Shown in pieces: positions 13,201 through 51,137 of a stretch of 64,000 nucleotides of DNA. The notes beneath the pieces were generated by a model. The model was not told where the DNA came from, did no database searches, and was given only the letters and a program-made list of their open reading frames with translations. This DNA is from Macrostomum lignano. Lineage: Eukaryota. Both the position numbers and the translations under genes were made by a program. Positions within the stretch are counted from its first letter, which is position 1. Each line of letters opens with the position of its first letter. The stretch spans positions 248,001 through 312,000 of the forward strand of contig NIVC01000127.1 of assembly GCA_002269645.1 (NCBI GenBank), given 5' to 3'.

Positions 13201-16200
13201 TCCATCTTACCCACAGTAAATTTCTTTCTAGCTTCATACTACGCATTTCACTTCGGTGGCAGCTGAAGCCCCCCCCCTTGTGCCGCGCTCTGCGTAACCG
13301 CATCAAAGCATCAAAATTCCAGAAATAAATGGCTTCATAAATCACTTTAGTCTGTGAGGGGGTTGCCACAGACTTCTGGTTGGGATCAGCTAGACAAGGT
13401 GAATTGTACGGGATGTGCGGAATGGGCTGCAGCATTGGTTCCTATATTGATGAATGTGCTCGCGGTGCTAAGCCGAAAACAGCAACTTCTTTTGCCCAGC
13501 TGCAGTGCAGAGGGTCAGTCGGCATTCGAATTTTCTATAGAGTAAATGCACTACTTGGCAAAACCAAACTATAAAACTTTGCTGAGCTCTTCTAATAGTT
13601 GGAAAACTCCCATCTTTGAAAAGACTATGGAGACTGCAATCCTCAGTTCACTGAGCCTGCAATCCTGAGTTCACTGGGCCTGCAATTCTCAGTTCATTGC
13701 ATAAGGCTGTAGTCCTCAGTTCACTGAGTTAGAAGCAGTTAACCCTAGGTAGAACACAATCCCAGGTAGAACCACAACCCCAAGTAGAACCAAAACCCCA
13801 GGTAGAACAACCCCAAATAGAACCAAAACTCCAGGTAGAACCACAAGCCCAGGTAGAACCACAAGCCCAGGTAGAACAACAACCCTAGGTAGAACCACAA
13901 CCCCAGGTAGAACCACAACCCCAGGTAGAACCACAACCCCAGGTAGAACCGCAACCCCAGGTAGAACCGCAACCCCAGGTAGAACCGCAACCCCAGGTAG
14001 AACCGCAACCCCAGGTAGAACCACAACCCCAAGTAGAACCGCAACCCCAGGTAGAACCGCAACCCCAGGTAGAACCGCAACCCCAGGTAGAACCGCAACC
14101 CCAGGTAGAACCGCAACCCCAGGTAGAACCACAACCCCAGGTAGAACCACAACCCCAGGTAGAACCACAACCCCAGGTAGAACCACAACCCCAGGTAGAA
14201 CCACAACCCTAGGTAGAACCACAACCCCAGGTAGAACCACAACCCCAGGTAGAACCGCAACCCCAGGTAGAACAACAACCCTAGGTAGAACAACAACCCT
14301 AGGTAGAACCACAACCCCAGGTAGAACCACAACCCTAGGTAGAACCACAACCCCAGGTAGAACCACAACCCCAGGTAGAACCGCAACCCACAACCCTCCG
14401 TCAATGACCTGAGCTCACCAGTGTTTAAAAAATCCTCTTCAAAGGTGCAGTTCCACCTGTGGTGCTGGAACATGACCTGGCAGGCCCGGTAGCCATTCAC
14501 CAGGCCGCTGTGCGCCAGTCGGTCAGCCACGCTGCCGGCGCGGCAGAGGTTGCGCAGACGCGGCGTCAGGTCAGCGGCGGTGCACAGCTCGTCGGGCACA
14601 TGCTTGAGCAGCTGGTAGAATGAGGTCGAGTCCATGGGCGGCTGCTGCCTTCTGAACTGCGACCGTCTGTGGAACAATGAGAGAACCAGCTGTTACCCCT
14701 CTGACTGTTTCCCAGACAGCTGCTGTCCCCTCTGTGACTGTTTCCCAGACAGCTGCTGTCCCCTCCGTGACTGTTTCCCAGACAGCTGCTGTCCCCTCTG
14801 TGACTGTTTCCCAGACAGCTGCTGTCCCCTCTGACTGTTTCCCAGACAGCTGCTGTCCCCTCTGTGACTGTTTCCCAGACAGCTGCTGTCCCCTCCGTGA
14901 CTGTTTCCCAGACAGCTGCTGTCCCCTCTGACTGTTTCCCAGACAGCTGCTGTCCCCTCTGTGACTGTTTCCCAGACAGCTGCTGTCCCCTCCGTGACTG
15001 TTTCCCAGACAGCTGCTGTCCCCTCTGTGGCTGTTTCCCAGACAGCTGCTGTCCCCTCCGTGACTGTTTCCCAGACAGCTGCTCAGCTGCTGTCCCCTCC
15101 ATGACTGTTTCCCAGACAGCTGCTGTCCCCTCCGTGACTGTTTCCCAGACAGCTGCTGTCCCCTCTGACTGTTTCCCAGACAGCTGCTGTCCCCTCTGTG
15201 ACTGTTTCCCAGACAGCTGCTGTCCCCTCCGTGACTGTTTCCCAGACAGCTGCTGTCCCCTCTGTGGCTGTTTCCCAGACAGCTGCTGTCCCCTCCGTGA
15301 CTGTTTCCCAGACAGCTGCTCAGCTGCTGTCCCCTCCATGACTGTTTCCCAGACAGCTGCTGTCCCCTCTGTGACTGTTTCCCAGACAGCTGCTGTCCCC
15401 TCTGTGGCTGTTTCCCAGACAGCTGCTGTCCCCTCCGTGACTGTTTCCCAGACAGCTGCTCAGCTGCTGTCCCCTCCATGACTGTTTCCCAGACAGCTGC
15501 TGTCCCCCTGTGACTGTTTCCCAGACAGCTGCTGTCCCCTCTGTGACTGTTTCCCAGACAGCTGCTGTCCCCTCCGTGCCTGTTTCCCAGACAGCTGCTG
15601 TCCCCTCCGTGACTGTTTCCCAATAATATATAATAATAATATTATATTATATTATTAATGAATATTTTCGAACGCCTGTTGCCATCAAGTGAAATAAATT
15701 AGCACGTGGTTTCCCGCGCTCTCAACAGGATTCGCACGCTGTGGCCCCAATTTAATTATTGATTATTACGCAATTCAATAAACCTTGCCGCTTTCTGAAT
15801 CCCCTTTCCGAGTTGAAGCATTTTTCGCACCTTGTAAACGTGCAGTTTCAAAGGCGAGGTTGTCAAACAGAGCTTGTTCGGTTGGTGCTAATAGCAAGCT
15901 AATCAGACTGACTCGAATGGCACCCGTGACTGCAACTTGCAGTGCGTGTAACATTTGTTTATGCATACTCATGCTGCCTGCAAGCCTCACCTGTTGAGTC
16001 TCGCGAAAATTTTTGAAGCCTGCCAGTCTATAGTAGGTTTCTTAACTGTTGGTACTTAAGATTTTTCACATTCTCAGATATCTGCAGAACTCAAGCTGAT
16101 GAACTGGTTCGATCGTTGCATAATGTACATATTGCCTGCACACTCTGTGCTTTTCACTGCCAATTTTATGCAAAACCTGACTGATCTTTCTGAACTCACT

Positions 16201-20980: not shown

Positions 20981-23900
20981 GCCACCAATTTAAACAAATC
21001 ACCTGGCATTCCATCGGATCTAATTGTTGTCATGGCAACAAGGCATTGCTCTGCTCCTATTCCAGCACACAGAGCAGATTCCCTAGCCAGGGCCACAGGG
21101 CCTGCCCAAACTGTGGCATTGTGGGGACTCTGGCTCCGCTCAGTGAAACCTCGGCATTTGTGCGTTGCTCCAACTGTCGCCAGTTCTTCATCAACAGGTC
21201 GACTGTTGCTGCAGCCACTTTTGATGACGTGGCAGGTGAACGGGCGGCAGCTGCTGCCGCTGCAGCTCGGACATTATCCAACATCATTGGGAGTCGGAGA
21301 ATTCCTTATCCCAGGGAGGTGAGTTTGTTGCTAGGGCACTCCTTTATCGCTCAACCACTCTGGCGCCATTTCTCATTCTAAACGCCATTTTTTGTTTTTA
21401 GCTCCATTTCTTATTCCATTCTCATTACATATCGGTAATATGTAATCTAGGTTTCGTACACCAATTATTTACATTGACGTCTGTTTAATAAAAATTATTA
21501 CTAACTACATGTAACAATGGATACAGACTACTCACAGTATAAACATGCAAAAACTTGCGTTAGATACGCGCCCACCTCGACCAGTACGTAGTGGGTCAGG
21601 AGTCCGCAAAGCGCCTGCTGAGTGTGCAGGCATATGCACACTACCGCAGGCTGCAGCACAATCTGCTTGGCTCCGACAAGCCCGAAAATCAACTGGAATC
21701 ACAGCTGACGCCTCTTTCGAGTAAGGTTTCGGTTTCGAATCTTTTTTCAGCATTCGTTGCTATACCGTATGTTTTACGTGACCTTCACTTGTACCAGCAA
21801 TTCTCACCCCTGCCTATATATTCTTCTAGAAGCAGCTGACGAATCAAAATTTCTATCTGCTTTGATGCAGCGGCAGCAGATGCCTGTTGATGGGATTAAT
21901 AAGTTCCTCTCATTTAGAGGTAAGCTTAGTTTATAAGCTGATATTGTAGCTTATTATTATAATGCGAAATAAGCACTATAGCAGGTGTTACAGAGTGGCG
22001 CCAGCAGGTGTTACAGAGTGGCGCCAGCAGGTGTTACAGAGTGGCGCCAGCAGATATGTTACAGAGTGGCGTCAGCAAGTGTTACAGAGTTGCGTCAGCA
22101 GGTTACAGAGTTGCGTCAGCAGGTTACAGAGTTGCGTCAGCAGGTGTTACAGAGTGGCGTCAGCAGGTGCTACAGAGTTGCGTCAGCAGGTTACAGAGTT
22201 GCGTCAGCAGGTTACAGAGTTGCGTCAGCAGGTTACAGAGTGGCGTCAGCAGGTGTTACAGAGTTGTGTCAGCAGGTGTTACAGAGTGGGGTCAGCAGGT
22301 GTTAGAGTGGGGTCAGTAGGTGTTACAGAGTGGGGTCAGTAGGTGTTACAGAGTGGGGTCAGTAGGTGTTACAGAGTTGCGTCAGCAGGTGTTACAGAGT
22401 TGCGTCAGCAGGTTACAGAGTTGCGTCAGCAGGTTACAGAGTTGCGTCAGCAGGTTACAGAGTTGCGTCAGCAGGTTACAGAGTGGCGTCAGCAGGTGCT
22501 ACAGAGTTGCGTCAGCAGGTGCTACAGAGTTGCGTCAGCAGGTTACAGAGTTGCGTCAGCAGGTTACAGAGTTGCGTCAGCAGGTTACAGAGTGGCGTCA
22601 GCAGGTGCTACAGAGTTGCGTCAGCAGGTTACAGAGTTGCGTCAGCAGGTGTTACAGAGTGGGGTCAGTAGGTGTTACAGAGTGGGGTCAGTAGGTGTTA
22701 CAGAGTGGCGTCAGCAGGTGTTACAGAGTTGCGTCAGCAGGTGTTACAGAGTGGCGTCAGCAGGTGTTACAGAGTTGCGTCAGCAGGTGTTACAGAGTGG
22801 GATCAGTAGGTGTTACCGTGTTACAGAGTGGCGTCAGCAGGTGCTACAGAGTTGCGTCAGCAGGTGCTACAGTCATGCCGCTCTCCCCTTTTCATCAGGC
22901 ATTCTCCGGGCGTTTGGCTTTGAGCGGAAACAACAACCGCTGCAGTCGCCGCCGCCGCAGTCGCCGCCGCAGTCTGCAAGAAGCCCAGTTCGGCTGTCCA
23001 AGAGCAACGTGCTGCTCATTGGTCCGAGCGGCTCCGGCAAGACCCAGCTGGTCCGCGCCCTGGCCCGCTCGCTCCGCGTACCCTTCGCCGCCTGCAGCTG
23101 CGCCGGCCTCACCCAGACAGGCTATTCCGGCGAGGGGGTCCAGTCGGCGCTCGCCGGCCTCTTGACCGCCGCGGGCGGCTGTCCCGGCCGGGCTAGGACT
23201 GGCGTGCTGTTCTTGGACGAGATTGACAAACTGGCTTCGTCAGCGTCTTCTGGCTTAGCAGCGGCCGAGGTTCAAGGAGATGTAGGCGGCGTTGGCGTTC
23301 AGCGGGACCTGCTGCGTCTGCTGGACGGCGCGGAGGTCGGCGTGTGCACCGCCGGTGAGCGAGACGATCTGGTGCAGCCCTTCGCACTGTGTGAATAGTA
23401 ACTGATGGCTGTGTGATAGTAGCTGTTTGGCTGCGTGAATAGTAGCTGTTGACTGCATGAATAGTACATGTAGTTTCAACGACAATTACTGGATACATGA
23501 CTGTCTGTGTCCATAATAGAGCGAATCTGTCTGGCACACTTCAGTGCATCTGGACAAATGATAGGATATGATGCAGCTAACGTGTCCGCTGCCCGTCTTT
23601 AAACTAAGATTCGGCGACCACCGTTCAATTGGACACTAGCGACATTCTGTTTGTGGCGTCGGGCACCTTCACCGGCCTCTCAGCTATTGTTCGCCGTCGC
23701 GAGGCCAAAGCTGGCGCCGCCACCAATACCAATAGAGAGTATTTGGCCATCTCGAGCGACGAGGAGGTCAGCAGCGCTCTGGCGCGGATGCAGCCGCCTG
23801 ACCTGGTGCAGTTTGGCCTGCTGCCCGAGCTGGTTGGCCGGCTGCCAGCCGTCGGGTTGCTCGCCAGCCTGCGCCCGGCCGAGCTGGCCCGCTGCCTCAC

Positions 23901-24222
23901 CGAGCCGCGGGACTCGCTGGCCCGTCAGTACCACAGCCTGCTGGCCGCTGACGGCTGCCGGCTAGTGCTGGAGCCCGGCGCCGCTCTGGCAATCGGCGAG
24001 GCGGCCGCGCGGCGCGGACTGGGCGCCAGAGGCCTGCGAGCAATCTTTGAGGCCCTGTTAATCAAAGCGCGCTTTGAAGCGCCCGGCGCCGGACAGGCAA
24101 GCGAAGTGCGCCTCACTGCTAACTGCTGCCGGGTGCTGGGCGAGTCGGGTGCCGGCCTGCCGACGGCGGCGCCGCTGCGTTTTCTTGGAAACGGCCCGAT
24201 TAGAAGGGATCAGGACGATTAA
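20981..24222 (+). CDS. CLPX: Mitochondrial ClpX-type AAA+ ATPase (divergent); 5' end not firmly placed
   Basis: join(20981..21318,21564..21720,21830..21919,22899..23354,23609..24222). C4 zinc finger CPNC...CSNC, PRE-IRAHLDQYVVGQ, Walker A GPSGSGKT, Walker B VLFLDEIDK, DTSDILFVASGTF, PELVGRLP, GARGLR. Candidate upstream exons 20403..20413 and 20725..20786 are phase-compatible but unverified. Confidence 0.9.
21980..22872. repeat. 21/23-bp minisatellite in a ClpX intron
   Basis: Units caggttacagagttgcgtcag / caggtgttacagagtggcgtcag; ends about 26 nt before the acceptor at 22898. Confidence 0.95.
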
Positions 24223-37948: not shown

Positions 37949-38512
37949 AGTTGAAGGCTTGTTGCAAAAACGCGCAACTGACTACTGATTAGTAGATGTC
38001 GGCCATCCCTATGCTGCAGAAAATATCAATATACAATACAATATATGTTATGGAAGATTGCCTGCCATCACTGCAAAGCTTTGCTATCTCCAGGTCTAGT
38101 AATTAGGTTTGTTTCGGGTCTCTCATCAGTGCATAGTTAGTAGGTTTAATTCAATTTTCAGTAGCAATTCTTATTTTAATAGATCTTATCAACTAGTAAG
38201 TTTGTTGTTTTGCAAAACCACGCAAACTTATTTATTTTGCTTACTATTTAGCGCACTTCTCCGCAACTTGTCATCTAAATAACTCTTAGAAGATAAAAAA
38301 TATAATTATGAATAAATTTGGCAACTTTGAAGCAACTAGCAAAAATATGGTTTGAATGGTAACATCTTTTTATTATTCAATTTTTTGCGAGTCCTGCGTA
38401 TATCAAGTTTCCTTGTTTTTTAATGACATGCCGCTTAGGGTGCCCTATAATTCTATTAGTAGCCTTTAAACCTAAGTTGAACTGCTCGGGTGGCTTTGGT
38501 CTCGTTTCTTAA

Positions 38513-41121
38513 CAGTAGAAAGACCACGCTATTTTTCCCCATGGGGAACACCACGGGGGTGTATTACACGACCCATTTCACGATAGCTCACAAACCGAAT
38601 AACCGATCTTCGTAAAAGTCCACCATATGGATCAAAATTTTCCGCCCTTTCCGACAAACCAACTTTCAAAGTCATCCGACGTCAGCATCGTCGAGATATT
38701 CAACTATTCTTGTCGAAGACACTGGTGGCAAGGACAACCAACACTACACTGTATAATAAACCTTTATGATGAATCCATATTGGCTCAATAATTTGGGTCC
38801 ATCTGTCGTAGAGGCCTTTGTTCTCAGCATCCCAGGCACCAGGGTACCCCTCATCTCCGTCTGGAGCAGCGGCGGCGACCGTCGGGACCTTCAACAAAAG
38901 CACCCGATCGGTATCTCAGAGACGGCTGCGTTCCCAAAACTGGAATGGAAGAATCCTCATAATCGGTGAGACATAATCGGTGAATGAAATAGACGATGGC
39001 GACCCTCTAGGCACAGGCGACCTTCGGGACCTTCAACGGAGTGCCACCACGCGGTCCTGACGAGCTGGCACCCCTAACATCGTGATTTTTCTATCAAGGC
39101 ACCAAACATGCAGGTATGCTTTTGCACCATGTCAAATTCGAAACTGCCGAACATCGTCAGCGGACTGCCGCAATGGACAAGCTCTACGGCAACGGACGCC
39201 TGTTGGAAAACTTTGTCAGTCAGCTACGCCATCGTGTTCTTTCCTGGCCGTACCTCTGCGTCGACGAAACTCTGGTTGTCTACTGGGGTGTGTGTGGACT
39301 GTGACTTCACGGTCTTTCTGAAGGAGAAGCCCGTCGCAATGGTGCCAAGCTGTTCCTGCTGACATCGGCTGGGAATTCAGAGATTCAGGATGACATGGAC
39401 ATCCGCTATGTGTTCAATGCGGAAATCTGCACTGGCAAAGGAACACTGCTGCCCACTAATTTTGCATCAGAGGAATCCGATGCTCGGCTGGCCAAGAGCT
39501 CAGAGGTGTGGAGTGGTGAGCAAGTTGTTTGCCACTTGGCTTATCCATTCAGATGACACTGGTACAGGAAATGGGATTCACGTTTCTTGGAACAGTGATG
39601 CGCACTCGTGGTGGCCTGCCAGCCGATCTCAATAATTCAACTCAAATCATGGCTCCACACACAAGCGAATTCCGGTTTTCTGAGGAGCTCACGTATGTGT
39701 CCTACTGCCCCAAGGCGGGCCGAAACGTGATGTTGCTGTCCACCATGCATCACGACAGACAATTGCTTCCCAATGGCAAGTCTGTAGCAATAGGCACGTA
39801 CTACAATTCTACCAAGAGTGGCACGGACACCTGCAACAGGATGTTCCGCACATCCGACTGCAAGCGAAAGTCCGACTCATGCGAGAAGGCAATCTTCTCC
39901 GGCGGCGTACTCAACATAGCAGCTGTGAATGCCACTGCTATCTGGAGACTGGCGCACCCGGAGCTCTGCGCCTCGCCGAACTATCGCAACGAGTTCCAAC
40001 TTCTGCAACCTCTGATTGAGGAGCGCTCGCAATCAGCCGCTCTTCTTCAGAATCTGTCCAATCATCACCGGCTGATGTTCCAGCTCGCAGGTTGTCGAAT
40101 CAACGACGAGCAAATGAAGGAACAGGCACGCGAAGCGGCGGCTGTGGTGTCAGTTGGTGGCAGAAAGCGCTGTGCAACATGTGCGAGAGAAGTCAAAGGA
40201 CGAGAAGCGTGCCTTGAGTGCGACCACAAGGAAGTGTTGCATGTGTGACGAAGGAATTTGCCGAAGACACACTGCGATGGAAGAGACAGTGAGTCACCAT
40301 TACTGCCTACGTTGTGCACCAAATTAAATAGTGACAATTGACTCCGCTTTTGTGTCTATGTGTCGGTGTTCAGATCCTTCTGCTCTGAATTTGCTGTAAT
40401 ATCCTTTTTGACAAATTAAATATTTTATATTCTTTAGGCGCCAATTAAATCTGTAACTCTCCGATTTAACATGGTACAAATGCATTGTATAATATGCAGA
40501 CATGCCTGGTTTGGTGCCTTGATAGAAAAAGCACGATGTTGAGGGTGTCAGCTCGTCGGGGCCTCGTGGTGGCACTCCGTTGAAGGTCCCGAAGGTCGCC
40601 TGTATGTCTACAGGTCAGCCTAGAGGGTCGCCATCGTCCATTTCATTCACCGATTATGTCTACTGACTGAATGCTGCATGCAGAAGAGGATTCTTCCATT
40701 TCAGTTTTGGGAACGCAGCCGTCTCTGAGATACCGATCGGGTGCTTTTGTTGAAGGTCCCGACGGTCGCCGCCGCTGCTCCAGACGGTGATGAAGGGGAC
40801 CCTGGTGCCTGGGATGCTGAGAACAAAGGCCATTACGACTGATATGCATAGTTTGTTGAGCCGACATGGTTTCATGCTGAGATTTTGTGAGCAGAAAATT
40901 TTTGCCAATGTTGGTGGTTTTTGCCACCGGACACCCTGAGGAGAATCATTGAATATCTCGACGATGCCGATTTTTCTTGATTCTCGAAGATGTTTCATCG
41001 AATAGAGCGGAAAATTTTAGCCGTGTTCTGGATTTTCATGGCAATTGTTAGAATATTTTTGGAGATACAGACAAAGGAAAAATGTGTGTATTTGAAATAC
41101 ACCCCCATGGTCTTTCTACTA
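38513..41121 (+). mobile_element. Decayed piggyBac transposon, TTAA-flanked, with an inverted second copy of its left end; transposase remnant at about 38750-40327
   Basis: TTAA at 38509-38512 and 41122-41125; termini CAGTAGAAAGACCA / TAGTAGAAAGACCA (inverted). Remnant motifs LLHHVKF, CVDETLV, VSYCPKAGRNVMLLSTMH, YNSTKSGTD, LNIAAVNA, and C-terminal Cys-rich RCATC...CCMCDEGICRRH...CLRC; many frameshifts. Confidence 0.88.
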
Positions 41122-41239
41122 TTAAAGGAAGACGATGTTCTTCATAAAAAACATTTTACAACCAGCGATTCGAAACCAGGGAAGCCTTTTCTGTTCTTGT
41201 CGGTCAAATGTCCTGGGAGCGCGAGATTTTCCCACAGGA

Positions 41240-41370
41240 GGATTCCCCGCAGGAAGCTTTCCTACAGGAGGGTTCCCCGCAGGAAGCTTTCCTACAGAAG
41301 GTTCCCCGCAGGAAGCTTTCCTACAGGAGGTTCCCCACAGGAAGCTTTCCTACAGGAGGGTTCCCCGCGA
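41240..41370. repeat. Short 29-30-bp tandem repeat
   Basis: Unit aggaagctttcctacaggagggttccccgc, about 4 copies. Confidence 0.8.
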
Positions 41371-41959
41371 GAATTAGGGTTTGCTTTTGTAGTTTCTCTA
41401 ATGGTAAGAAACTTTTTAGCGAAGAAAGAGAACGGGTTCGTTCGACCCATTTTTCTAAACTTAGCAGTGTTCTGTCAGGTGTTAATCTTTTAGTATCCTT
41501 TGAAATATAACATTGTTTCCGTTAGCAGTTCCTTATGTCTGTCGACCGAAAACCTAGCGCACATTCTCTCTACGAAGGCCTTCACACGGAACTACGAAAT
41601 CTCCCTTGGGAGAATTTTCCCATAGTCAGAATCACGAGAAACCTCAGCAGCCTCTTAGCTCAATTGAGTCCGCTCTCTATATTTATCTGCCCCTGGGCAG
41701 CGCCCCGCAGTGCCTGAGAGTGGAAGGAGTTTCACATGGAGTAGCGGCGCCTTCTGAACGTTAAGAGCTCAGGATTAAAGAATTGGAAATTTTCTGGCTT
41801 ATTGGCCTCTCAGCTCCTCTTCTTCAAGCCCCGCCTGTTTGCTGGCGCTGTCTTGGTCTATGGAATACCACTGATAGTGATGTTGAAGCTTAGAGCTGGG
41901 AGCTCTTGTTTTATTATTCCCCTGGTCCTCAGTTGTTTCGGGGTGGTCTGCGTCGAAAG

Positions 41960-42640
41960 GTCTTACCTCGAGAATGTGTGTTTCCTCTTCTTACGAGTAC
42001 GTAGTCTCTACACAATGCCCAGTCATGAAAAGCTAAAGCAGAAGACGATACACTCTTCTTGACTGGTGATGGTCGCTCGCCCGGTAGCCCTTAGGTAGCG
42101 GATGAGCTGACAGAGATTCTCGGGCCGGAAAACGTCAGAGGGTTTGGGTCGAGGTAGGTGAGCTTGTCCTAAGTATAGGCGGGGCATTCGCAGATGAAGT
42201 GCTCCGCATTCGCAACACAGAAGGGGCATTCTTTGCTACGGATTTTTCCCTGGAAGTAAGGGTGTCTGGCGAAACAGGTAGGGCCCGTGAGGGCCATGGT
42301 TAATCTGAATCCCTGATGTCCCTGCGGTTGAGTCTAAGCAGGGCCCTGCGGACGGCGGGCGGACATGGGACAGCCGCACGGGATTGCCGGCAGTCTGGTC
42401 GAGCCAGCCTTGACCAGACGATCGACCAAATCGAGCTTTGGGACACCTTGTTGGATGCGCTTAAGTGTTTAAGCTGCGCGTTGCAGTCGAGGACTGTACG
42501 CGAGCAGGTGGTGGTGCCCTCAAGGGCATGGATCGCCGCTTGACTGTCTGGTTGTCTGGAGGATGATCGCACCCAAAACTCGCTGATAACAATCGCAAAT
42601 CACGGGTGCAAATTTCTCTGAAGGCATCTTTTTTATTCTT
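41960..42640 (-). mobile_element. 3' fragment of an RNase H-containing non-LTR retrotransposon (R1/I/Tad-like), decayed
   Basis: [20 protein letters not shown] (RNase H), [30 protein letters not shown] (zinc-knuckle remnant), LIRYLRATGR*; frameshifted. Confidence 0.75.
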
Positions 42641-43625
42641 AGCACTAGTATTGATAAATCTATCAAAAGTTTTTACCTTGGGCGGGGCAGACAAAGAATC
42701 TTGCTTATGGCTGCGGGCCAGATGAGAGAAAAAGGAGAGGCGAGAGAGATGGGAGAAGAGCGTGGAGATGAGATGGAAGGAGAGAAGAGGGAAAGAGAGG
42801 AGAGGTAAGATGAGATGAGACCAACCTTAAGCGGGCCACATTGCTGTTGTGAAGTTTCAAGAACCCGAGGGCCGGATAGAGAGGCTTCGAAGGATGAAGT
42901 TTGCCGACCCCTGCACTAAATCTACCATTCACAGAGGCTGCACTCACAAGGTTATCAAGCTGGTTTTCGTGAAATTCTGCCGGAGAAAGGTCCCGGCAAA
43001 ATTTCAGTTTTTCTTTTTATGTATTTTTTCTAGACAGTTCGACCGGATTTGTCTATGGCAAAACCCTATTCATTGCCATGCAGAAAAGTAAATCTTCGAG
43101 AAATCTTGTCTGGGTATACAAACTACCCGGTACTTCAGACCAAGGTAAATGGCATTTTAAGCAAACTGCAGGTTACTGTTACTTCAGTCTCTCTGTTCCT
43201 CTTTTTAGCTTCATCTCGTTCGAATCAACAAAAACGAGTCCCTCAAAGCCTGAGAGGACTTCGATTTTCCCCATTCACCTGACGTCTCCATCGCCTTTGC
43301 TATCGACTATTTCTGGCGAGTGTCTGCATGCAATATGATGCAGTTGCAGTGACGCCCTGGCTGGACTGCAGACTCGCATGCTAACATGTAGACATGTATA
43401 TGCATGTAGTCTGTCAGGAATTGTAGATGAAAATTCACGATTCGCTCAATTTACAACACGCTCAGGTTTCAGTTGCTACTTTGAAACTTATCTCTATATT
43501 CGCTTAGGTATTAATTTTATCGTCAAGACGTCACCTGGACGATCCTGCTGCTGAATTGATTGGTCAATCTGGTCAATATGGCTCCGCTTATCTGCTGGTT
43601 ACGGATTCATTGTCCTAATCCAGAG

Positions 43626-43945
43626 CAATAATAATAATAATAGTAGTTACGCCCCACGCCAGCCACAGAAGTGGCCAAAAGGGGGGAGCGTCAAATCGCG
43701 CGTTTCAGAGCTAGGTCTCTAATGTGCTTCACACCGGCCGCCTGGCTGGGTGCTCGCGCATCTTCAAAAAGGCGGTCGACGTAGCGGGATGATCGTCCCT
43801 GGCCACGTCTGCGCGGTCCCTGCGGGGTCCACAGCAAGACGTCCTGCAGCGGCTCTGGGCAGTAAGCTTCGGCCCGGATGACATGTCCGGCCAGCCGCAG
43901 AGCAACTTTCAGTCACCGTCCGTCCTCGAATCGCATCCGACACTT
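43626..43945 (-). mobile_element. 5'-truncated RTE-clade LINE
   Basis: LRLAGHVIRAE...VLLWTPQGPRRRGQGR..RYVDRLFEDA...* followed by a (TAT)n tail at about 43626-43645. Confidence 0.8.
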
Positions 43946-44302
43946 GTTGTTGAGCTGCTGGTTTGACTAAAGCTGGTTTGACTATAGGCTCTTACGGGCC
44001 CTACAAATTCCAGTAAAAATACTGCAAAAGATGGGTTTGAACACTGTTGCTGAACTGAACCGCTTTAATCCGAACTTAAAAAGGGAGCGTATGGCTCCGA
44101 TGCGGATTTTAAGCCTGCAGTAAATGACAGTTTATTTGTCTTAAGAGTTCACAAAGAGAAACAACTTTAGAGGAAAGTATATGCTATAATACTGGGACAC
44201 AGTGCAGGCTGCCAGCAAGTGGCCGAAAATTCAGATCAGAACTTGTTTAGTCCCATATACGCCTGTCTGGCTTGCAAAACTGCAGCAATCCTGCTTAATA
44301 TA

Positions 44303-44917
44303 TCAATCTTGAGTAGGATTTTGAGTGATGTAATCGAAGAAACTCGAATGCATATTGCCATCGAAACGCTTGCCGAACATTCCACCGTTGAACCGCTTGC
44401 CGAACATTCCACCGTTGAACCGCTTGCCGAACATTCCACCGTTGAACCGCTTGCCGAACATTCCCCCGTTGAACCGCTTGCCGAACATTCCCCCGTTGAA
44501 CCGCTTGCCGAACATTCCACCGTTGAACCGCTTGCCGAACATTCCACCGTTGAACCGCTTGCCGAACATTCCCCCATTGAACCGCTTGCCGAACATTCCC
44601 CCGTTGAACCGCTTGCCGAACATTCCCCCGTTGAACCGCTTGCCGAACATTCCACCGTTGAACCGCTTGCCGAACATTCCACCGTTGAACCGCTTGCCGA
44701 ACATTCCCCCGTTGAACCGCTTGCCGAACATTCCACCGTTGAACCGCTTGCCGAACATTCCTCCGTTAAATTTCTTAACTTGGTTTGCAGCCAACGCCTG
44801 CTGTGTCGCATGCTCAGCGTTGTGAGGAATCACTTCAGTGTCCGCTAGCGAACAGAATGGAATGGATGCCAAAATGGCAGCTACAGCACCCAGAACAAGT
44901 ATATGTCGACTAGCCAT
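44303..44917 (-). CDS. Neuropeptide precursor: signal peptide + 15 x FNGGMF-amide
   Basis: Single ORF of 204 aa. Hydrophobic N-terminus with SLA-DT cleavage site, KK, then (FNGGMF-G-KR)15 and a non-amidated tail. Differences between the 27-bp repeat units are synonymous in this frame (GGT/GGG/GGA, AAC/AAT, TTC/TTT). Confidence 0.92.
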   Translation of the reverse strand: MASRHILVLGAVAAILASIPFCSLADTEVIPHNAEHATQQALAANQVKKFNGGMFGKRFNGGMFGKRFNGGMFGKRFNGGMFGKRFNGGMFGKRFNGGMFGKRFNGGMFGKRFNGGMFGKRFNGGMFGKRFNGGMFGKRFNGGMFGKRFNGGMFGKRFNGGMFGKRFNGGMFGKRFNGGMFGKRFDGNMHSSFFDYITQNPTQD

Positions 44918-45002
44918 GTTTAATCGCGACAGATCGTCTGCAGTCTATGCAGTCTAAGCCTCTCAATTTGTTGACCATGCTAAGAGCACCAGCTACACTG
45001 CA

Positions 45003-45010
45003 TATTTATA
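45003..45010 (-). promoter_or_regulatory. TATA box of the neuropeptide gene
   Basis: TATAAATA on the minus strand, about 86 nt upstream of the ATG at 44917. Confidence 0.55.
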
Positions 45011-45879
45011 CGAAAGAGGAATTCAAACCATCTCCTGTCCCACGAGGCATGATTGGTCGAGCTCCTGCTCAGAATTCTAGTCATTGAGAGCTTATTCGTT
45101 ACAAGTTACAACCGCTCCGAAATCAGAGTCAGTTATTACTGCCCAAGTTTTCAGTTGTTGCATGCAATGCGCAGGAAAAAATGAATAAATTTTAAAGCAG
45201 GCAAAACGCGATTCTGTCTCAAATATATGCAATTTAGATTAGCACACAGAATTTATACAACCATTTTTCTCTCAACTATCGTACGAGTACTTCAACTTTC
45301 CTTCCCTGGTGAACGCAACCTAGAAATGGCCAAGATCCATATTTGGGACTCGATGATGATGGAAGCGCACGGGAGGAATCGCGCCAGCTTCCTGTCCTGG
45401 GGGACTGCTGAATTGGTGAAAATTAACTTTCGACACGCAGAGTCTCCAAGATGATAGTCTAAAAAAGTTTGTTAGTTTTTAAAACAACCCAGGGGTGTCA
45501 CCAAGCATTTTATGGTAGGGGGGAGCCAAGAATTCTACGTGACTAAATTTCTACAGTATTTTGGGAATCTGCATGGGTTCTAGCTAGCACTCATTTTGGC
45601 GCCGCAGACACTGGCGCCACAGGCCTCATTTTTTGCACCTCAAGCACTCATTTTTTCACAGTTTTGGCGCTGAGACACTCGTTTTGGCGCTGAAGGCGTT
45701 ATATTTTGGTGCTCTGAAACAAAATTTGTTATTTGCATAGGTGGGGCTTGGGGTGACAAAGTAATGGCATGTCCCCACATAGCTTTTACTAGGGGGGGGG
45801 GGTGGGGACATGTATCCGCCGGTGGCGACGCCCCTGCACCAACCTATAGCTCGTAAATTCTATAGATGTACGAGCATAG

Positions 45880-46060
45880 CTCACGGACAACCGAACTAAT
45901 TTGCGCGAGCATAGGCCACGCCGCTGACAGAATCCGGGGGCTGCAGACAGTGCATGCTTGCAGCATCAGTAGCAGCAACCGTACCGGCTGTGAGCAGTCG
46001 TATACAACTCGGCGCGGATGATGTGGCCTGCCAGTTGGAGTTGCCAAAGGCGCAACAGGT
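45880..46060 (-). mobile_element. Second, more degraded RTE-like LINE remnant
   Basis: QLAGHIIRAE[frameshift]YDCSQPVRLLLL resembles RLAGHVIRAEAYCPEPLQDVLL at 43.9 kb. Confidence 0.5.
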
Positions 46061-46485
46061 TGCTTAGACTGACCAGACTGCCTTGAAATTGTGGCCTATG
46101 GCAAGCCATGATGAGACAAATTAAGTACTCCAGCTCATTTAACTTCTCCTCCGCTGGGAGTTCCGATTTTTTAATTAAATTATCTTAAAACATTGCACAC
46201 CAATTTCCCCCGACTTGAACACGAGTAAACGAGCGTTTAAAAGTCGCAAAGCATAAATATTTAGAGTAGAAACGAGTAGTTAACGATAAGGATTGGTAAA
46301 ATAAAAGCCTATCAAGATATTTATTGATTTTTAAATACATTCAATAGTTAAACGCTTTAAGTTTCAGATTAATGGAGAAATGTTCAATATTCAAAATTTA
46401 TGATTCAATAAAACGAAAACGTTATGCATGTTATGTAAAGAACATTTTTTACAAATTTTCTACACACTACTGTTGTTTAACCAAG

Positions 46486-47490
46486 TCAGTAGTAAGGAAC
46501 GGTGTTTGGCACCACAACAACCGGCACACTGCTGTGGTGCACCACGTAGGCTGACACGCTGCCCAGCACCGTGCGCCGCACAGTGCCGAGTCCACGGCTA
46601 CCCATCACTAGGAGGTCCGCGCCTCGATCCTCGGCCAGCTTAACAATGGCCGGGCCGGGACCGCCGCAGTATTCGCACAGCCAGCGAGCGTCGGTCAGGT
46701 TGTACGGCAGGCACCAGTCGGATGTCACTTTGCGCTCCAGCTGGCGCGCTGAGGCCACTATTGAATGCCAGACCTGAGTGTGTCAGATGTGCGATTGGCA
46801 TGCGCGCTTTTGGTGGACTGCGTGTGCTTATAGGCTCACCAAGGATGAGGTGCTGTTGCAGACAGACCATGTGAACCAGCGGCCCTACTATGACCCCTAT
46901 GACCCGAAGACCCATGGATCTGAAGACTCAATAACCCTATGACCCTGTGATCTGACCACCCTGTGATTGACCCAGCGGCCCAATGACTCTGTGAACCAGT
47001 GGCCTTAATGACCTAAGAGTAAGACCCAATGACCCTGTGACTGTGACCTATGACCCTGTAACCCCATTACCCTGTGATCCAATGACCCTGTGACCCCATG
47101 ACTCTGATCTAATTACCAGCTGTGACCCAACCCAATGCCCTATGACCTAACGGCTGTAACCTAGTGTTTGGCCTACTAGCCACTAGCCAGCACTCATCGA
47201 TTAAATATATCATATCATATCATATCATATCAATACTCATAGATCGACCTGTCCCCCTCCCCACTCACCTGACTCGGGTCACTCCACAAGCCCGAAGGTG
47301 GCGCTTCGACGTGCAGAAAAGTCACGTGATCGCCCCGTCGATACAGCCGCCGCATGAAGTAGTCGAACGCCCGCTTAGATTGCTCGCCGCCGTCCACAGC
47401 GATGGCGACAACTCGAGATGAGCTGTTGTCGAATTTCTGTTTCTCGCTAACAGCTGTGATTTGCTGTTGCTGCTCGGGCTCCGCCTCCAT
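46486..47490 (-). CDS. Universal stress protein (UspA domain), 169 aa
   Basis: complement(join(46486..46773,47269..47490)). [76 protein letters not shown]; the G-x2-G-x9-G(S/T) ATP-binding motif is intact. Confidence 0.93.
46880..47160. repeat. Degenerate short tandem repeat in the USP intron
   Basis: Repeated tgaccc(t/a)(a/g) motifs. Confidence 0.7.
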
Positions 47491-48424
47491 GTTCTCGGGT
47501 GCTTTGGAACTTAACTTAGACTTAGGAATTTAACTATTTTGTTATTGCAGTCAAACTAAGATTGTTTGTCACACCAACCAAGGGCCAGCCAGACAGAACT
47601 GGCCTGCGCTTCTCTATTTAGTTGATTCTAGGGCGTGCATCTTGCTTTGTCTCTTGTGCGTGGGGTGCCGGCTTTCTTATCTCTCTGCCGACGCCTGCCC
47701 TTTCTAAGTGCGCTTAGAATGTACATTGTCCCGGGTAGTGTACATTCTTTTATTATTAGACTTCGACTTTTGCCCCCAACCCCATTTTTATCGGTTTGGC
47801 TGGACGGAAAACAGACCTAGATTAAGTAATTGTTTTTTGCCTTTCTTTTATTAATATATTTGTACTTTTTGACAGAATATATCGATCATCTTTGATTCTT
47901 TGACGTTTGTTATAAAATCACGCAATTTTAGCTGATTATACATTAACTTCCTTTGGTAAATATTAGGACTGCAAATGCAACAAGAGTAATATAGCTCGTA
48001 AATAAACGAAGCATAAAAATCGTGTTAAAACGCGTTCCTAATTTTGTTTAACGCTTCGCTTATAAATAAATCGCTTTTAAATTGTTCAGGGAACATTTCA
48101 AAGGTGTCTTTGTTTTACCTTTAAAAGTAGAAATACTTTATTTTGATGCATTTTATAGAATATTAACCACACTTTCAAGCGCAGTATCCTGAGGAAGATA
48201 GTAATTGGTTAGTGCCATAAGAGATTAAAACACTGATTTTTTGTATTTAGGATTCTCAAGGAGGTAAATTACATGCACGAGACATGCTGAGCAAAGCTAA
48301 TTGGTTAAACAGAAAGTGGCAGAGAGTTACAGAGCGGCTCAGATTGGTGCAGAATCTAATTTTCGTATTCTCAATGTGTGCATGCCAAAGCTTGAATTCA
48401 CTGCAGTTGCAGCTGTCACTAGTC

Positions 48425-51137
48425 CTACATCAGTGTCGACTGGGTCGCTGCAAAGTGACTGTAGGCTGCGAATCCGGCAGCAGCAGCAGTGATGCAGCCG
48501 CCGCTGCCACCGACGCTGCCGTCGTTCCCGTTGACGCTGCCTTGATAGCCCGCAGCAGGGCCGCCGTAGCCGTAGCCGTAGCCGTAACCATAGCCGTAGC
48601 TATAACCGTAGCCTGCCTGCGCCTGGGTCCGATCCCAGCTGCCAAGCTGATGCTGCTGATGTTGCAGCGCCTGCTGCTGCGGCTGCTGCTGTTCCGCTGG
48701 CTGATAGAAACGAGGCAGCTGCTCCTCAGCCTTCGACTGCTCAGCAACCGCGGCCTCGGCTTGAGCAGGCGAATCAATACCAACCGCCTTGGGCGCTGCC
48801 ATCTGCCGCAGCGCCTTCTCCGTTCGTTTCCGCTCCACGATCAGCGCGCAGCCGTCGCATCTGCAGGCCAGGAACGGGCAGCGCCGCTTATGACCGCGCC
48901 ACTCCACTGACAGGCCGTGGTTGCGGCACTTGCGGCAGTGCGCGGTCAACGGCGAGGCTGCTGCTGCTGCTGCTGACGACTCGGTCGCAGCATTGGGGTT
49001 CGGCGACGCCGAGGTCGGCGGCTGAAGGTCCGGCAGCGCGCCGCGCTGGTCCCTGTACATGGCAATCTGCCTGGCGACCACCCGGCGACTTCGATCGACC
49101 ATTCGGCAGGCCTGGCAGCCGCAGGTCAGGTAGGGGCACAGCTTCTTGTGCCGCCGCACCGGGGCTTTGAGGCCGTGGGCTCGGCACTTGCGGCACAGGT
49201 AATCGGACCGAATGCTGCCCCCGCCGCTGCTGGCTGCGTGTTGGATGGCCTCGGTCGAGCTGAAATGGGTCGAGTTGGAGATTCACTGCAGGTTGATACA
49301 GATGAAGATGCTGCAACGTTAGTTGTTTCTTTCAGTAACTTGTCTGTCCCGCAAATCCACTCAATCTCACATTGATCCATGATCGCACCCTGAGATTCCC
49401 CACTTCACGCACCTACACGCCATCTCAATCCTTTAAGACTCCAAGTAACACGTCAAGCGATCCCCAATCCTAACCTAATAAGACATCCACAGCCTCACTC
49501 CAAGTCTCCAAGATATCTCAAAACACAACTGAAGAGATCCGAACTCTCGCTCCAAGATCCAATACTGAAGGTCCCAATCTCACCCAAGAGATCCTGATCT
49601 CACCCAAGAGATCCTGATCTCACCCAAGAGATCCTGATCTCACCCAAGAGATCCTGATCTCACCCAAGAGATCCTGATCTCACCCAAGAGATCCTGATCT
49701 CACCCAAGAGATCCTGATCTCACCCAAGAGATCCTGATCTCACCCAAGAGATCCTGATCTCACCCAAGAGATCCTGATCTCACCCAAGAGATCCCAATCT
49801 CACCCAAGAGATCCTGATCTCACCCAAGAGATCCTGATCTCACCCAAGAGATCCTGATCTCACCCAAGAGATCCTGATCTCACCCAAGAGATCCTGATCT
49901 CACCCAAGAGATCCTGATCTCACCCAAGAGATCCTGATCTCACCCAAGAGATCCCAATCTCACCCAAGAGATCCTGATCTCACCCAAGAGATCCTGATCT
50001 CACCCAAGAGATCCTGATCTCACCCAAGAGATCCTGATCTCACCCAAGAGATCCCAATCTCATCCAAGAGATCCTGATCTCACCCAAGAGATCCCAATCT
50101 CACCCAAGAGATCCTGATTTCAGCCAAGAGATCCCAATCTCACCCAAGAGATCCTGATCTCACCCAAGAGATCCCAATCTCACCCAAGAGATCCTGATCT
50201 CACCCAAGAGATCCCAATCTCACCCAAGAGATCCCAATCTCACCCAAGAGATCCCAATCTCACCCAAGAGATCCCAATCTCACCCAAGAGATCCTGATTT
50301 CAGCCAAGAGATCCCAATCTCACCCAAGAGATCCCAATCTCACCCAAGAGATCCCAATCTCACCCAAGAGATCCTGATCTCACCCAAGAGATCCTGATCT
50401 CACCCAACAGATCTCAATCCCACTCAAGAGATCCCAATCTCACCCCAACAGATCTCAATCTCACCCCAGCAGATCTCAATCTCACCCCAGCCGATCCCTA
50501 TCTCACCCAAAGAGATCCCCAATTTCACCCAAAGAGATCCACAATCTCACCAAAGAGATCCCGATCTCACTTCAAAAATTCCAATGACGCACAAATAGAT
50601 CCCAATCTCACCCCAAAAGATCCCGATCTCACCCAACAGATCTCAATCTCACCCCAGCCGATCCCTATCTCACCCAAAGAGATCCCCAATTTCACCCAAA
50701 GAGATCCACAATCTCACCGAAGAGATCCCGATCTCACTTCAAAAATTCCAATGACGCACAAATAGATCCCAATCTCACCCCAAAAGATCCCGATCTCACC
50801 CAACAGATCCCAATCTCACTGTAGAGGAGACCTATCACACTTGAAGATATCTTTAATCTCATGCTTTTAGATCCCAATGTCACCCGAAGGGCTAAAAGAT
50901 TCATTTTCTCATCTCTAAGAGCTGGAATCTCACCCACCTAAGACCCATATCTCAAAATCCACTCGTGCATTGAATTACAATAAATGAAAATAATAAATGT
51001 ATAAAAGCTACTCACTGCACTTCATTTGGTGTTGATGGCGAAGCTTCAGACTTGACAGTGAACAATTCCAAGCTGAACTGCTGCGGATGCTGGCACTGCT
51101 GATGCTGCTGATGCTGGAAGCTGGACTGTTGGTACAT
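48425..51137 (-). CDS. DMRT: Doublesex/MAB-3-related (Dmrt) transcription factor with two DM domains, 318 aa
   Basis: complement(join(48425..49259,51016..51137)), phase-2 junction. DM1 CRKCRAHGLKAPVRRHKKLCPYLTCGCQAC; DM2 CRKCRNHGLSVEWRGHKRRCPFLACRCDGC; Q-rich and (GY)n C-terminal region. Confidence 0.92.
49575..50820. repeat. 20-bp minisatellite in the Dmrt intron
   Basis: Unit gatctcacccaagagatcct, degenerating towards 50820. Confidence 0.95.

What the first reader, a model, noticed from the sequence alone, without database searches (positions are those of the whole stretch)
44303..44917. Neuropeptide precursor releasing 15 identical FNGGMF-amide hexapeptides, hidden among non-coding minisatellites
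Seen: signal peptide, dibasic KK/KR sites, Gly amide donors, a TATA box, and only synonymous variation among the 27-bp repeats. That is the opposite of the frameshifting arrays elsewhere and indicates purifying selection on the peptide. Established: G-KR is the prohormone convertase, carboxypeptidase E and PAM amidation signal. I cannot assign it to a named family: the similarity to buccalin-type FxGGL-amides and to SALMFamide S1 (GFNSALMFamide) is only superficial. It may be an undescribed neuropeptide signalling system with an orphan receptor, and repeat masking would easily hide it. A degenerate 16th copy (FDGNM...) is not amidated.
Basis: partly seen in the sequence, partly recalled or inferred. 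Interest (0 to 1): 0.75.

Follow-up and report, generated by a model that had tools for sequence, protein, structure and literature searches.

The report
Flatworm SIFamide-like multi-copy neuropeptide gene
This is a real gene of the flatworm Macrostomum lignano that should release 15 copies of the amidated peptide FNGGMF-NH2; it is already in GenBank as a shortened "hypothetical protein", and the peptide most resembles the known SIFamide / nematode NLP-10 neuropeptides rather than a new signalling system.

Summary
Window 44303-44917 (-) is a 204-aa ORF made of a signal peptide, a pro-region, KK, 15 identical FNGGMFGKR units and a non-amidated tail. A TATA box, a good start context and AATAAA flank it. 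The four variable columns of the 27-bp array all fall on codon position 3.

The window is Macrostomum lignano assembly GCA_002269645.1. The locus is already annotated (BOX15_Mlig004279g1, "hypothetical protein"), but as a 114-aa model that skips 10 repeat units. Two homeologous loci carry 28 and 31 units.

The closest relative among 1.84 billion representative proteins is nematode NLP-10 (C. elegans AIPFNGGMY-amide). [quoted passage not shown] Arthropod SIFamide ends in PPFNGSIF-amide and Bombyx IMFamide in PMNGIMF-amide.

The precursor's architecture differs from canonical SIFamide precursors: many copies, no Cys-pair tail, and the peptide does not follow the signal peptide directly. In this it resembles NLP-10.

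Family assignment rests on a 6-residue motif and is moderately confident (about 0.55). That it is a processed secretory peptide precursor is highly confident (about 0.9). Interest is modest.

The parts
45003..45010 (-). TATA box (TATAAATA), 93 nt upstream of the ATG
   Evidence: Read directly from the minus-strand sequence.
44843..44917 (-). Start codon and signal peptide (aa 1-25, MASRHILVLGAVAAILASIPFCSLA); start context aaacATGg
   Evidence: ORF list. The hydropathy profile has a 9-residue window mean up to 2.8 over residues 5-19, and S-L-A occupies positions -3 to -1. No SignalP was run.
44771..44842 (-). Pro-region DTEVIPHNAEHATQQALAANQV followed by the first dibasic site, KK
   Evidence: Translation. 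Nucleotides 1-147 of the CDS, which cover this part, are 100% identical in the three homeologous loci, while the non-coding flanks are 94-98% identical.
44366..44770 (-). 15 tandem 27-bp units, each encoding FNGGMF-G-KR (peptide, amide-donor Gly, dibasic cleavage site)
   Evidence: All 4 variable columns are codon position 3 and synonymous.
44303..44365 (-). Degenerate 16th unit and acidic C-terminal tail FDGNMHSSFFDYITQNPTQD, plus the TGA stop (44303-44305); no Gly-dibasic site, so not amidated
   Evidence: There are two non-synonymous differences from the homeologs (S/P, F/L), which indicates weaker constraint.
44131..44136 (-). AATAAA polyadenylation signal, about 170 nt downstream of the stop
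   Evidence: Read directly.

Best explanation
A single-exon neuropeptide (peptide-hormone) precursor gene of the free-living flatworm Macrostomum lignano. The inferred processing, from the standard regulated secretory pathway, runs as follows. The signal peptide is removed after Ala25. A PC2-type convertase cuts after KK and after each KR. A carboxypeptidase E/D-type enzyme trims the basic residues. PAM converts the exposed Gly into a C-terminal amide. The product is 15 identical FNGGMF-NH2 hexapeptides per precursor ([M+H]+ 671.297), plus an N-terminal pro-peptide and a non-amidated C-terminal peptide. The peptide is most probably the macrostomid representative of the SIFamide / NLP-10 branch of the NPFF/SIFamide family. 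It would then act on an NPFF/SIFamide-type rhodopsin GPCR, the orthologue of arthropod SIFaR and C. elegans NPR-35, which is Gq-coupled in the nematode. Shown here: the ORF, the processing motifs, codon-phase-restricted variation, conservation in three homeologous loci, an existing gene model, and the motif match to NLP-10 and SIFamide. Inferred: actual processing, neuronal expression and receptor identity.
For: The anatomy is as described. Variation is restricted to synonymous third positions, whereas control arrays vary in all phases. The organism and locus are fixed: window 38303-50917 is an exact reverse match to NIVC01000127.1 of GCA_002269645.1, and the ORF equals the span of the annotated gene BOX15_Mlig004279g1. 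Three syntenic homeologous loci each have a Usp gene upstream and carry the same gene with 15, 28 and 31 units. Their signal and pro-region are 100% identical (147 nt), against 94-98% identity in the flanks. All three annotated products have exactly 5 units although the genomic arrays differ. This fits models derived from one repeat-collapsed transcript, which is indirect evidence of transcription. An M. lignano PC2 homologue has an RNAi phenotype (PMC4490696). Family: an exhaustive HMMER search of 1.84 billion representatives found a nematode NLP-10 orthologue (P0119, E 9e-8) as the only hit sharing the core motif. C. elegans NLP-10 encodes AIPFNGGMY-G-KR, and the family is named CBR-NLP-10. 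hhalign against an NLP-10 profile gives probability 98.4% and E 7e-15. Some nematode orthologues end in GGFF-G, so F-amide occurs inside that family. NLP-10 is SIFP-1, the ligand of NPR-35/SIFR-1 of the NPFF/SIFamide receptor family. Arthropod SIFamide is ..PPFNGSIFGKR and Bombyx IMFamide is ..PMNGIMFGKR. The M. lignano unit aligns to the SIFamide profile (KFNGGMFGKR / PFNGSIFGKR, 70% identity) at least as well as NLP-10 itself does.
Against: There are no direct transcript reads, peptide mass or expression site. Family assignment rests on a 6-9 residue motif. The hhalign E-value against SIFamide (4.6e-5) is hardly better than against an unrelated PxFVamide family, where only 'GKR' aligns (1.3e-4). 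BLASTP to an unrelated bivalve 'LWamide-like' precursor also gives 6e-9 because of the periodic GKR. Canonical SIFamide precursors in arthropods, annelids, molluscs and nemerteans have 1-2 peptides, the first directly after the signal peptide, and a C-terminal Cys pair. This gene has none of these features. Other spiralian SIFamide/FFamide peptides end in NSLLF, NNLLF or SNLFF rather than NGGMF. No orthologue was found outside M. lignano. The presence of a SIFaR/NPR-35 orthologue in M. lignano was not tested.
Confidence: 0.55

Rival explanations
1. A genuine neuropeptide precursor, but lineage-specific to Macrostomum or flatworms. On this reading its resemblance to NLP-10 and SIFamide is convergent, and it acts on an unrelated, still orphan receptor (a GPCR or a peptide-gated DEG/ENaC channel). 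This is essentially the first reader's reading.
For: Short amidated peptides converge easily. Control comparisons show that periodic GKR alone gives 'significant' scores. The precursor architecture is unlike canonical SIFamide precursors. No orthologue was found in any other flatworm or spiralian in three protein searches and one metagenome scan. There is no Pfam family.
Against: The peptide matches NLP-10-1 in 5 of 6 residues, and every differing position is covered by variation inside the SIFamide/NLP-10 family (G/S at -3, M/I at -2, F/Y at -1). NLP-10 shares the multi-copy, Cys-free architecture. NPFF/SIFamide-type receptors are reported as generally present in lophotrochozoans, and SIFamide is listed among the families reported in flatworms.
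Confidence: 0.3
2. A secreted repetitive propeptide that is not neuronal, for example a gland, pheromone, antimicrobial or seminal-fluid peptide that uses the same convertase and PAM machinery.
For: Nothing in the sequence specifies the cell type, and no expression data were obtained.
Against: Many identical short amidated peptides separated by Gly-Lys-Arg is the hallmark of neuropeptide precursors. The closest relatives are all neuropeptides.
Confidence: 0.08
3. A buccalin / allatostatin-A-type precursor (FxGGL-amide).
For: The F-x-G-G core is shared. UniRef even labels one nematode NLP-10 orthologue 'Allatostatin'.
Against: The amide donor Gly follows M-F, so the amidated end is -GGMF-NH2 and not -GGL-NH2. 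The C-terminal residues define that family (own knowledge). No buccalin or AstA precursor appeared among the best 150 hits.
Confidence: 0.04
4. A non-coding minisatellite that happens to be open in this frame.
For: The window is packed with minisatellites (71 TRF rows). Several frames on both strands are open across this array.
Against: The ATG has a good context and a signal peptide directly upstream of the array. TATA and AATAAA flank it. Variation occurs only at third codon positions (p about 0.007). The 147 nt upstream coding part is 100% conserved in three homeologs. A gene model already exists.
Confidence: 0.03

Closest known systems
Nematode NLP-10 (= SIFP-1), ligand of NPR-35/SIFR-1
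   Same: Both are multi-copy precursors with peptides separated by G-K-R and no Cys-pair tail. The core matches: AIPFNGGMY-NH2 against FNGGMF-NH2, 5 of 6 residues. Some orthologues end in -GGFF-NH2. This is the best hit in the exhaustive protein search, and hhalign gives probability 98%.
   Different: NLP-10 has 4-7 non-identical peptides of 9-10 residues with a (A/M/I)P N-terminal extension, mostly F-S-G-G-M-Y, and a Tyr-amide end. Here there are 15 identical bare hexapeptides with a Phe-amide end. The two come from different superphyla (Ecdysozoa and Spiralia).
Arthropod SIFamide (..YRKPPFNGSIF-NH2) and its paralogue IMFamide/SMYamide (..PMNGIMF-NH2)
   Same: The C-terminal motif x-N-G-x-(I/M)-F-NH2 is shared, as is the G-K-R processing site.
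   Different: The arthropod precursor has a single 12-residue peptide directly after the signal peptide and a C-terminal associated peptide with two conserved Cys. This gene has a 22-residue pro-region first, 15 copies and no Cys.
Spiralian SIFamide/FFamide precursors (Platynereis, molluscs, nemerteans)
   Same: Same superphylum. The peptides are Phe-amides with Asn at -5 and a hydrophobic residue at -2 (..PNMNSLLF-NH2..NMNNLLF-NH2).
   Different: They have two different peptides per precursor plus a Cys-pair tail. The sequence between N and F differs (S-L-L or N-L-L against G-G-M). The M. lignano peptide is closer to the ecdysozoan forms.
Cestode 'Attachin', published as a SIFamide homologue (Preza et al. 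2022, J Neurochem 162:467), and the flatworm npp catalogues (McVeigh 2009; Koziol 2016)
   Same: These are flatworm SIFamide-type peptides, so the family has already been claimed for the phylum.
   Different: I could not read these papers. I therefore do not know whether the M. lignano gene or the FNGGMFamide peptide is already listed there. The strings FNGGMF and GGMFamide occur in none of the 8.3 million searchable full texts.

Membership tests
Neuropeptide / peptide-hormone precursor (generic) | N-terminal signal peptide | tested here: met
   A hydrophobic core spans residues 5-19 and S-L-A precedes the predicted cleavage site. This is a heuristic check; SignalP was not run.
Neuropeptide / peptide-hormone precursor (generic) | Peptides flanked by dibasic sites, with a C-terminal Gly as amide donor | tested here: met
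   KK before unit 1 and G-K-R after each of the 15 units.
Neuropeptide / peptide-hormone precursor (generic) | Transcribed and processed, with the peptide detectable | not testable with these tools
   Support is indirect only. Annotated models in three loci share a 5-unit product unlike any genomic array, which suggests a collapsed transcript assembly.
SIFamide / NPFF family (protostome SIFamide type) | C-terminal motif (F/L/M)-N-(G/S/N)-x-(I/L/M/F)-(F/Y)-NH2 | tested here: met
   FNGGMF-G-KR was compared with PFNGSIF, PMNGIMF, MNSLLF, MNNLLF and FNGGMY. Statistical support is weak: hhalign probability 68%, against 54% for an unrelated control.
SIFamide / NPFF family (protostome SIFamide type) | Peptide directly after the signal peptide; 1-2 peptides per precursor | tested here: not met
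   A 22-residue pro-region precedes 15 copies. Nematode NLP-10 does not meet this feature either.
SIFamide / NPFF family (protostome SIFamide type) | C-terminal associated peptide with two conserved Cys | tested here: not met
   There is no Cys after the signal peptide. Two Cys are invariant in the arthropod alignment. They are absent from NLP-10 too.
SIFamide / NPFF family (protostome SIFamide type) | Activates an NPFF/SIFamide-type GPCR, and such a receptor is present in the genome | not tested
The literature reports such receptors as generally present in lophotrochozoans.
Nematode NLP-10 (GGxY-amide) family | Several P-F-(S/N)-G-G-(M/I/L/V)-Y-G-K-R units in a small secreted precursor | tested here: inconclusive
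   The core F-N-G-G-M-aromatic-G-K-R is shared. However, the Pro extension is absent, the C-terminus is Phe rather than Tyr, and the phylum differs. Homology cannot be separated from convergence by sequence alone.
Buccalin / allatostatin-A | Amidated C-terminus -(F/Y)xFGL-NH2 or -xGGL-NH2 (own knowledge) | tested here: not met
   The amidated end is -GGMF-NH2.
Echinoderm SALMFamides | S-x-(L/F)-x-F-NH2 (own knowledge) | tested here: not met
   Position -5 is Asn, not Ser, and position -3 is Gly, not Leu or Phe. Only -MF-NH2 is shared.

The most novel reading that the evidence does not exclude
FNGGMFamide could be an uncatalogued flatworm peptide that links arthropod SIFamide (FNGSIF) and nematode NLP-10 (FNGGMY). 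That would imply the ancestral protostome SIFamide end was F-N-G-x-(I/M)-(F/Y)-NH2, and that the trochozoan 'FFamide' forms are derived. In Macrostomum the gene has been amplified to 15-31 identical copies per precursor in at least three homeologous loci, which could make it one of the most abundant peptides in the animal.
Probability: 0.3. Interest if true: 0.5.

Novelty: new member of a known kind. Interest (0 to 1): 0.33.

Why it matters
M. lignano is a tractable flatworm model in which RNAi is established (PMC4490696). This locus supplies a concrete, cheaply synthesised ligand (FNGGMF-NH2) with a specific receptor prediction, the NPR-35/SIFaR orthologue, which makes SIFamide-type signalling testable in a basal flatworm lineage. 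A SIFamide homologue has been reported to stimulate motility and attachment in tapeworms (title of Preza et al. 2022). The peptide's intermediate sequence also bears on how SIFamide, NLP-10 and spiralian FFamide relate to each other. On the practical side, the public gene models for all three loci are wrong (5 units instead of 15, 28 or 31), which illustrates how repeat collapse and repeat masking distort multi-copy neuropeptide genes.

Tried and rejected
- **Pfam scan of the ORF:** no family, even at E<=10.
- **Word-indexed search of 5.8 billion proteins with the ORF:** it returned only the M. lignano models and a metagenomic secreted protein with PRFNxGMF(E/D) repeats. That protein lacks Gly-dibasic sites, so I judged it a chance resemblance.
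- **Exact-sequence look-up of the 204-aa ORF:** not on record, because the annotated product is the 114-aa version.
- **Profile of 91 synthetic variants of the repeat unit**, built to catch diverged multi-copy relatives. The second scored only 8000 candidates and gave 3 irrelevant or nematode hits, and did not even recover the M. lignano protein, so it is uninformative.
- **Metagenome contig scan:** 30 pattern matches, none confirmed.
- **Literature string searches:** FNGGMF, GGMFamide, GGMYamide and FSGGMY gave zero papers. The GGMFG hits were unrelated, for example a crinoid calcitonin.
- **Key flatworm papers not held:** McVeigh 2009, Koziol 2016 and Preza 2022.
- **Supplements of a 2026 M. 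lignano expression paper:** they do not mention Mlig004279.
- **Planarian peptidome paper (Collins 2010) and a schistosome npp paper:** no MF-amide or GGM peptide in the main text.
- **hhalign and BLASTP controls:** periodic GKR inflates scores against unrelated amidated families. I therefore do not treat the E-values as proof of homology.

Full report
**1. Observation**

It encodes 204 aa:
- a signal peptide, MASRHILVLGAVAAILASIPFCSLA;
- a pro-region, DTEVIPHNAEHATQQALAANQV;
- the dibasic site KK;
- fifteen identical FNGGMFGKR units;
- a tail, FDGNMHSSFFDYITQNPTQD, whose first nine codons are a visibly degenerate 16th unit.

Tandem Repeats Finder reports the array at 44363-44767 with period 27, 15.0 copies, 97% matches and no indels. 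Residues 5-19 form a strongly hydrophobic core followed by S-L-A.

On the coding strand, TATAAATA lies at 45003-45010, 93 nt before the ATG. The ATG context is aaacATGg. AATAAA lies at 44131-44136, about 170 nt after the TGA.

**2. Is it more than a minisatellite with an accidental open frame?**

Openness is not evidence here, because several frames on both strands are open across the array. Three other observations are evidence.

- Only 4 of the 27 columns vary among the 15 units (TTT/TTC, AAC/AAT, GGA/GGT/GGG, CGG/CGT). All four are third codon positions of the signal-peptide frame and all are synonymous. The chance of this for a pre-specified phase is 0.007.
- Other arrays in the window whose period is a multiple of three vary in all three phases.
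- The 147 nt that encode the signal peptide and pro-region are identical in three homeologous loci, whose non-coding flanks are only 94-98% identical. The two differences in the C-terminal tail are both non-synonymous, as expected for a spacer.

**3. Provenance and annotation status**

- The best protein hit is Macrostomum lignano BOX15_Mlig004279g2.
- Window 38303-50917 is an exact reverse-complement match to GCA_002269645.1 contig NIVC01000127.1:286303-298917. The ORF coincides with the span of the annotated gene BOX15_Mlig004279g1, product PAA90071.1, 114 aa, 'hypothetical protein'.
- That product equals the 204-aa ORF minus ten repeat units.
- Two other contigs carry syntenic copies, each with a Usp-domain gene upstream. 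Their arrays have 31 and 28 units, yet they too are annotated with a 5-unit, 114-aa product.
- Three different genomic arrays giving the same 5-unit product is what one expects if the models come from one repeat-collapsed transcript contig. I take this as indirect evidence of transcription. It is an inference; I recall, without verifying here, that this assembly's annotation is transcriptome-based.
- So the gene is not hidden, but its public models are truncated.

**4. The homeologs temper one claim**

In the 31- and 28-unit arrays, some units read GGG GTA (FNGVMF). Some units are 26 nt long, one G short in a G-run, which breaks the frame after unit 14. I cannot tell whether these are real or long-read homopolymer errors. 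Either way, each copy still encodes at least 14 FNGGMF units from its ATG.

**5. Mechanism**

The motifs are the textbook substrate of the regulated secretory pathway. I apply that established knowledge here; I have not demonstrated the processing.
- Signal peptidase cuts first.
- A prohormone convertase cuts after KK and after each KR.
- A carboxypeptidase E/D-type enzyme trims the basic residues.
- PAM amidates using the exposed Gly.

The predicted products are 15 x FNGGMF-NH2 (monoisotopic 670.290, [M+H]+ 671.297), one 22-residue pro-peptide and one 20-residue acidic C-terminal peptide. After signal-peptide removal, 59% of the precursor is peptide plus amide donor. M. lignano has a PC2 homologue whose knock-down is deleterious (PMC4490696).

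**6. Family**

*Search results.* Pfam finds nothing. An exhaustive HMMER search against 1.84 billion representative proteins gave many repeat proteins. Among the recognisable amidated multi-copy precursors in the best 150 (PxFV-amide, an NPGIW-amide type, a bivalve 'LWamide-like'), only one shares the core. It is a Mesorhabditis protein with AAMPFSGGMYGKR units.

*Identity of that hit.* Searching with it returns the nematode family that includes 'CBR-NLP-10' and C. elegans NLP-10. The latter reads ...KR AIPFNGGMY GKR STMPFSGGMY GKR ... AAIPFSGGMY GKR ... GAMPFSGGMY GR. FNGGMF and FNGGMY differ only in the conservative last residue. Several strongylid orthologues end in -ISGGFF-Gly, so Phe-amide occurs within that family.

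*Link to SIFamide.* Published work identifies NLP-10 (renamed SIFP-1) as the cognate ligand of NPR-35/SIFR-1. That receptor is a Gq-coupled member of the bilaterian NPFF/SIFamide receptor family (PMC11004728, PMC11532408).
- Arthropod SIFamide is (A/G/T)Y(R/K)KPPFNGSIF-NH2.
- Its lepidopteran paralogue ends in PMNGIMF-NH2.
- The flatworm peptide therefore sits between the arthropod and nematode forms: F-N-G-(G|S)-(M|I)-(F|Y).

**7. How strong is the family assignment?**

| Comparison | Result |
|---|---|
| M. lignano protein vs NLP-10 profile (hhalign) | probability 98.4%, E 7e-15 |
| M. lignano protein vs arthropod SIFamide profile (hhalign) | probability 68%, E 4.6e-5 over KFNGGMFGKR / PFNGSIFGKR |
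| NLP-10 profile vs SIFamide profile (hhalign) | probability 56% |
| Control: M. lignano protein vs unrelated PxFV-amide family (hhalign) | probability 54%, aligned on 'GKR' alone |
| Control: M. lignano protein vs unrelated bivalve precursor (BLASTP) | E 6e-9 |

The match to SIFamide is slightly better than NLP-10's own match to SIFamide. However, the controls show that periodic Gly-Lys-Arg inflates these statistics. The argument therefore rests on the specific 6-residue core, not on E-values.

Architecture argues both ways. Canonical SIFamide/FFamide precursors in arthropods, Platynereis, molluscs and nemerteans carry one or two peptides. The first follows the signal peptide directly, and a C-terminal peptide holds two conserved Cys. 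This gene has none of those features, and neither does NLP-10. Other spiralian members end in NSLLF, NNLLF or SNLFF, so the M. lignano peptide looks more 'ecdysozoan' than its spiralian cousins.

My confidence figures:
- about 0.9 that this is a processed secretory peptide precursor;
- about 0.55 that it belongs to the SIFamide/NLP-10 lineage;
- about 0.3 that it is a convergent, lineage-specific peptide.

**8. Novelty**

- A SIFamide homologue has been published for tapeworms ('Attachin', Preza et al. 2022; seen only as a citation).
- SIFamide is listed among the peptide families 'previously reported in flatworms'.
- NPFF/SIFamide-type receptors are reported as generally present in lophotrochozoans.
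- The key flatworm catalogues could not be read, so I cannot exclude that this precursor is already listed.
- The peptide string appears in no searchable full text, and not in the held part of a large neuropeptide query collection that does contain other M. lignano entries. That file was cut when stored.
- No orthologue outside M. lignano was found. The collections searched are poor in flatworm transcriptomes, so this absence is weak evidence.

**9. Verdict**

The 'undescribed signalling system' interpretation is probably wrong. The best reading is a highly amplified, NLP-10-like member of the SIFamide family, at a locus that is already annotated but mis-modelled. Interest is modest: it is a useful, testable ligand-receptor prediction and an annotation correction, not a new kind of system.

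Noticed in passing
L001 5001-6045 and L002 5001-5965 (GCA_002269645.1 NIVC01001722.1 and NIVC01000162.1): The homeologous copies of the gene have 31 and 28 units. Unit 15 in both, and unit 23 in L001, are 26 nt long (one G short in a G-run), which breaks the frame. Units 19 and 27 in L001, and 19 and 24 in L002, encode FNGVMF. The annotated 114-aa models bridge the breaks with a gap inside the array. It is undecided whether the breaks are real mutations or long-read homopolymer errors.
   Followed up: partly
window 44303-44917 (-) versus GenBank PAA90071.1: The public gene model for this very locus omits 270 nt (10 repeat units) from an uninterrupted ORF. All three homeolog models share the same 5-unit product, so the annotation appears to derive from a repeat-collapsed transcript.
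   Followed up: yes
window 10238-10882 (-) and 13745-14677 (-): These are two exons of a Wnt gene (Pfam wnt, E 1e-21 and 7e-5). They are separated by, and merge into, minisatellite arrays; the 18-bp array at 13741-14389 runs into the upstream ORF.
   Followed up: partly
window 48425-49159 (-): An ORF with two DM DNA-binding domains (a DMRT-type transcription factor; Pfam DM, E 1e-19, two stretches) lies about 3.5 kb upstream of the peptide gene.
   Followed up: partly
window ~46486-47490 (-): A universal-stress-protein (Usp, PF00582) gene lies immediately upstream of the peptide gene. The same pair is conserved in all three homeologous loci.
   Followed up: partly
window 39529-40248 (+): An ORF fragment matches the C-terminal part of a piggyBac-type transposase (DDE_Tnp_1_7, E 4.5e-7).
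   Followed up: no
window 22343-24222 (+): An AAA+ ATPase exon (Pfam AAA and AAA_2; ClpX-like by eye). Its ORF is extended upstream through the 23-bp minisatellite at 21980-22816.
   Followed up: no
whole window: Minisatellite density is extraordinary: 71 TRF rows, with at least ten arrays of about 1 kb or more (periods of 4 to 36 bp). Many create long spurious ORFs in several frames, for example 4337-6034 at 565 aa.
   Followed up: partly
P0002, P0026, P0185 (metagenome proteins): Small signal-peptide proteins from metagenomes carry PRFN(R/G)GMF(E/D) repeats that mimic the FNGGMF unit. They lack Gly-dibasic sites, so they are probably an unrelated family of unknown function.
   Followed up: no
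P0181, P0182, P0183, P0175 (Logan/JGI, organism unknown): Short NLP-10-like precursors (AIP(V/L)SGGMYGKR ... GGVYG) come from unnamed environmental or SRA assemblies. They could show how far the GGMY-amide family reaches beyond nematodes.
   Followed up: no
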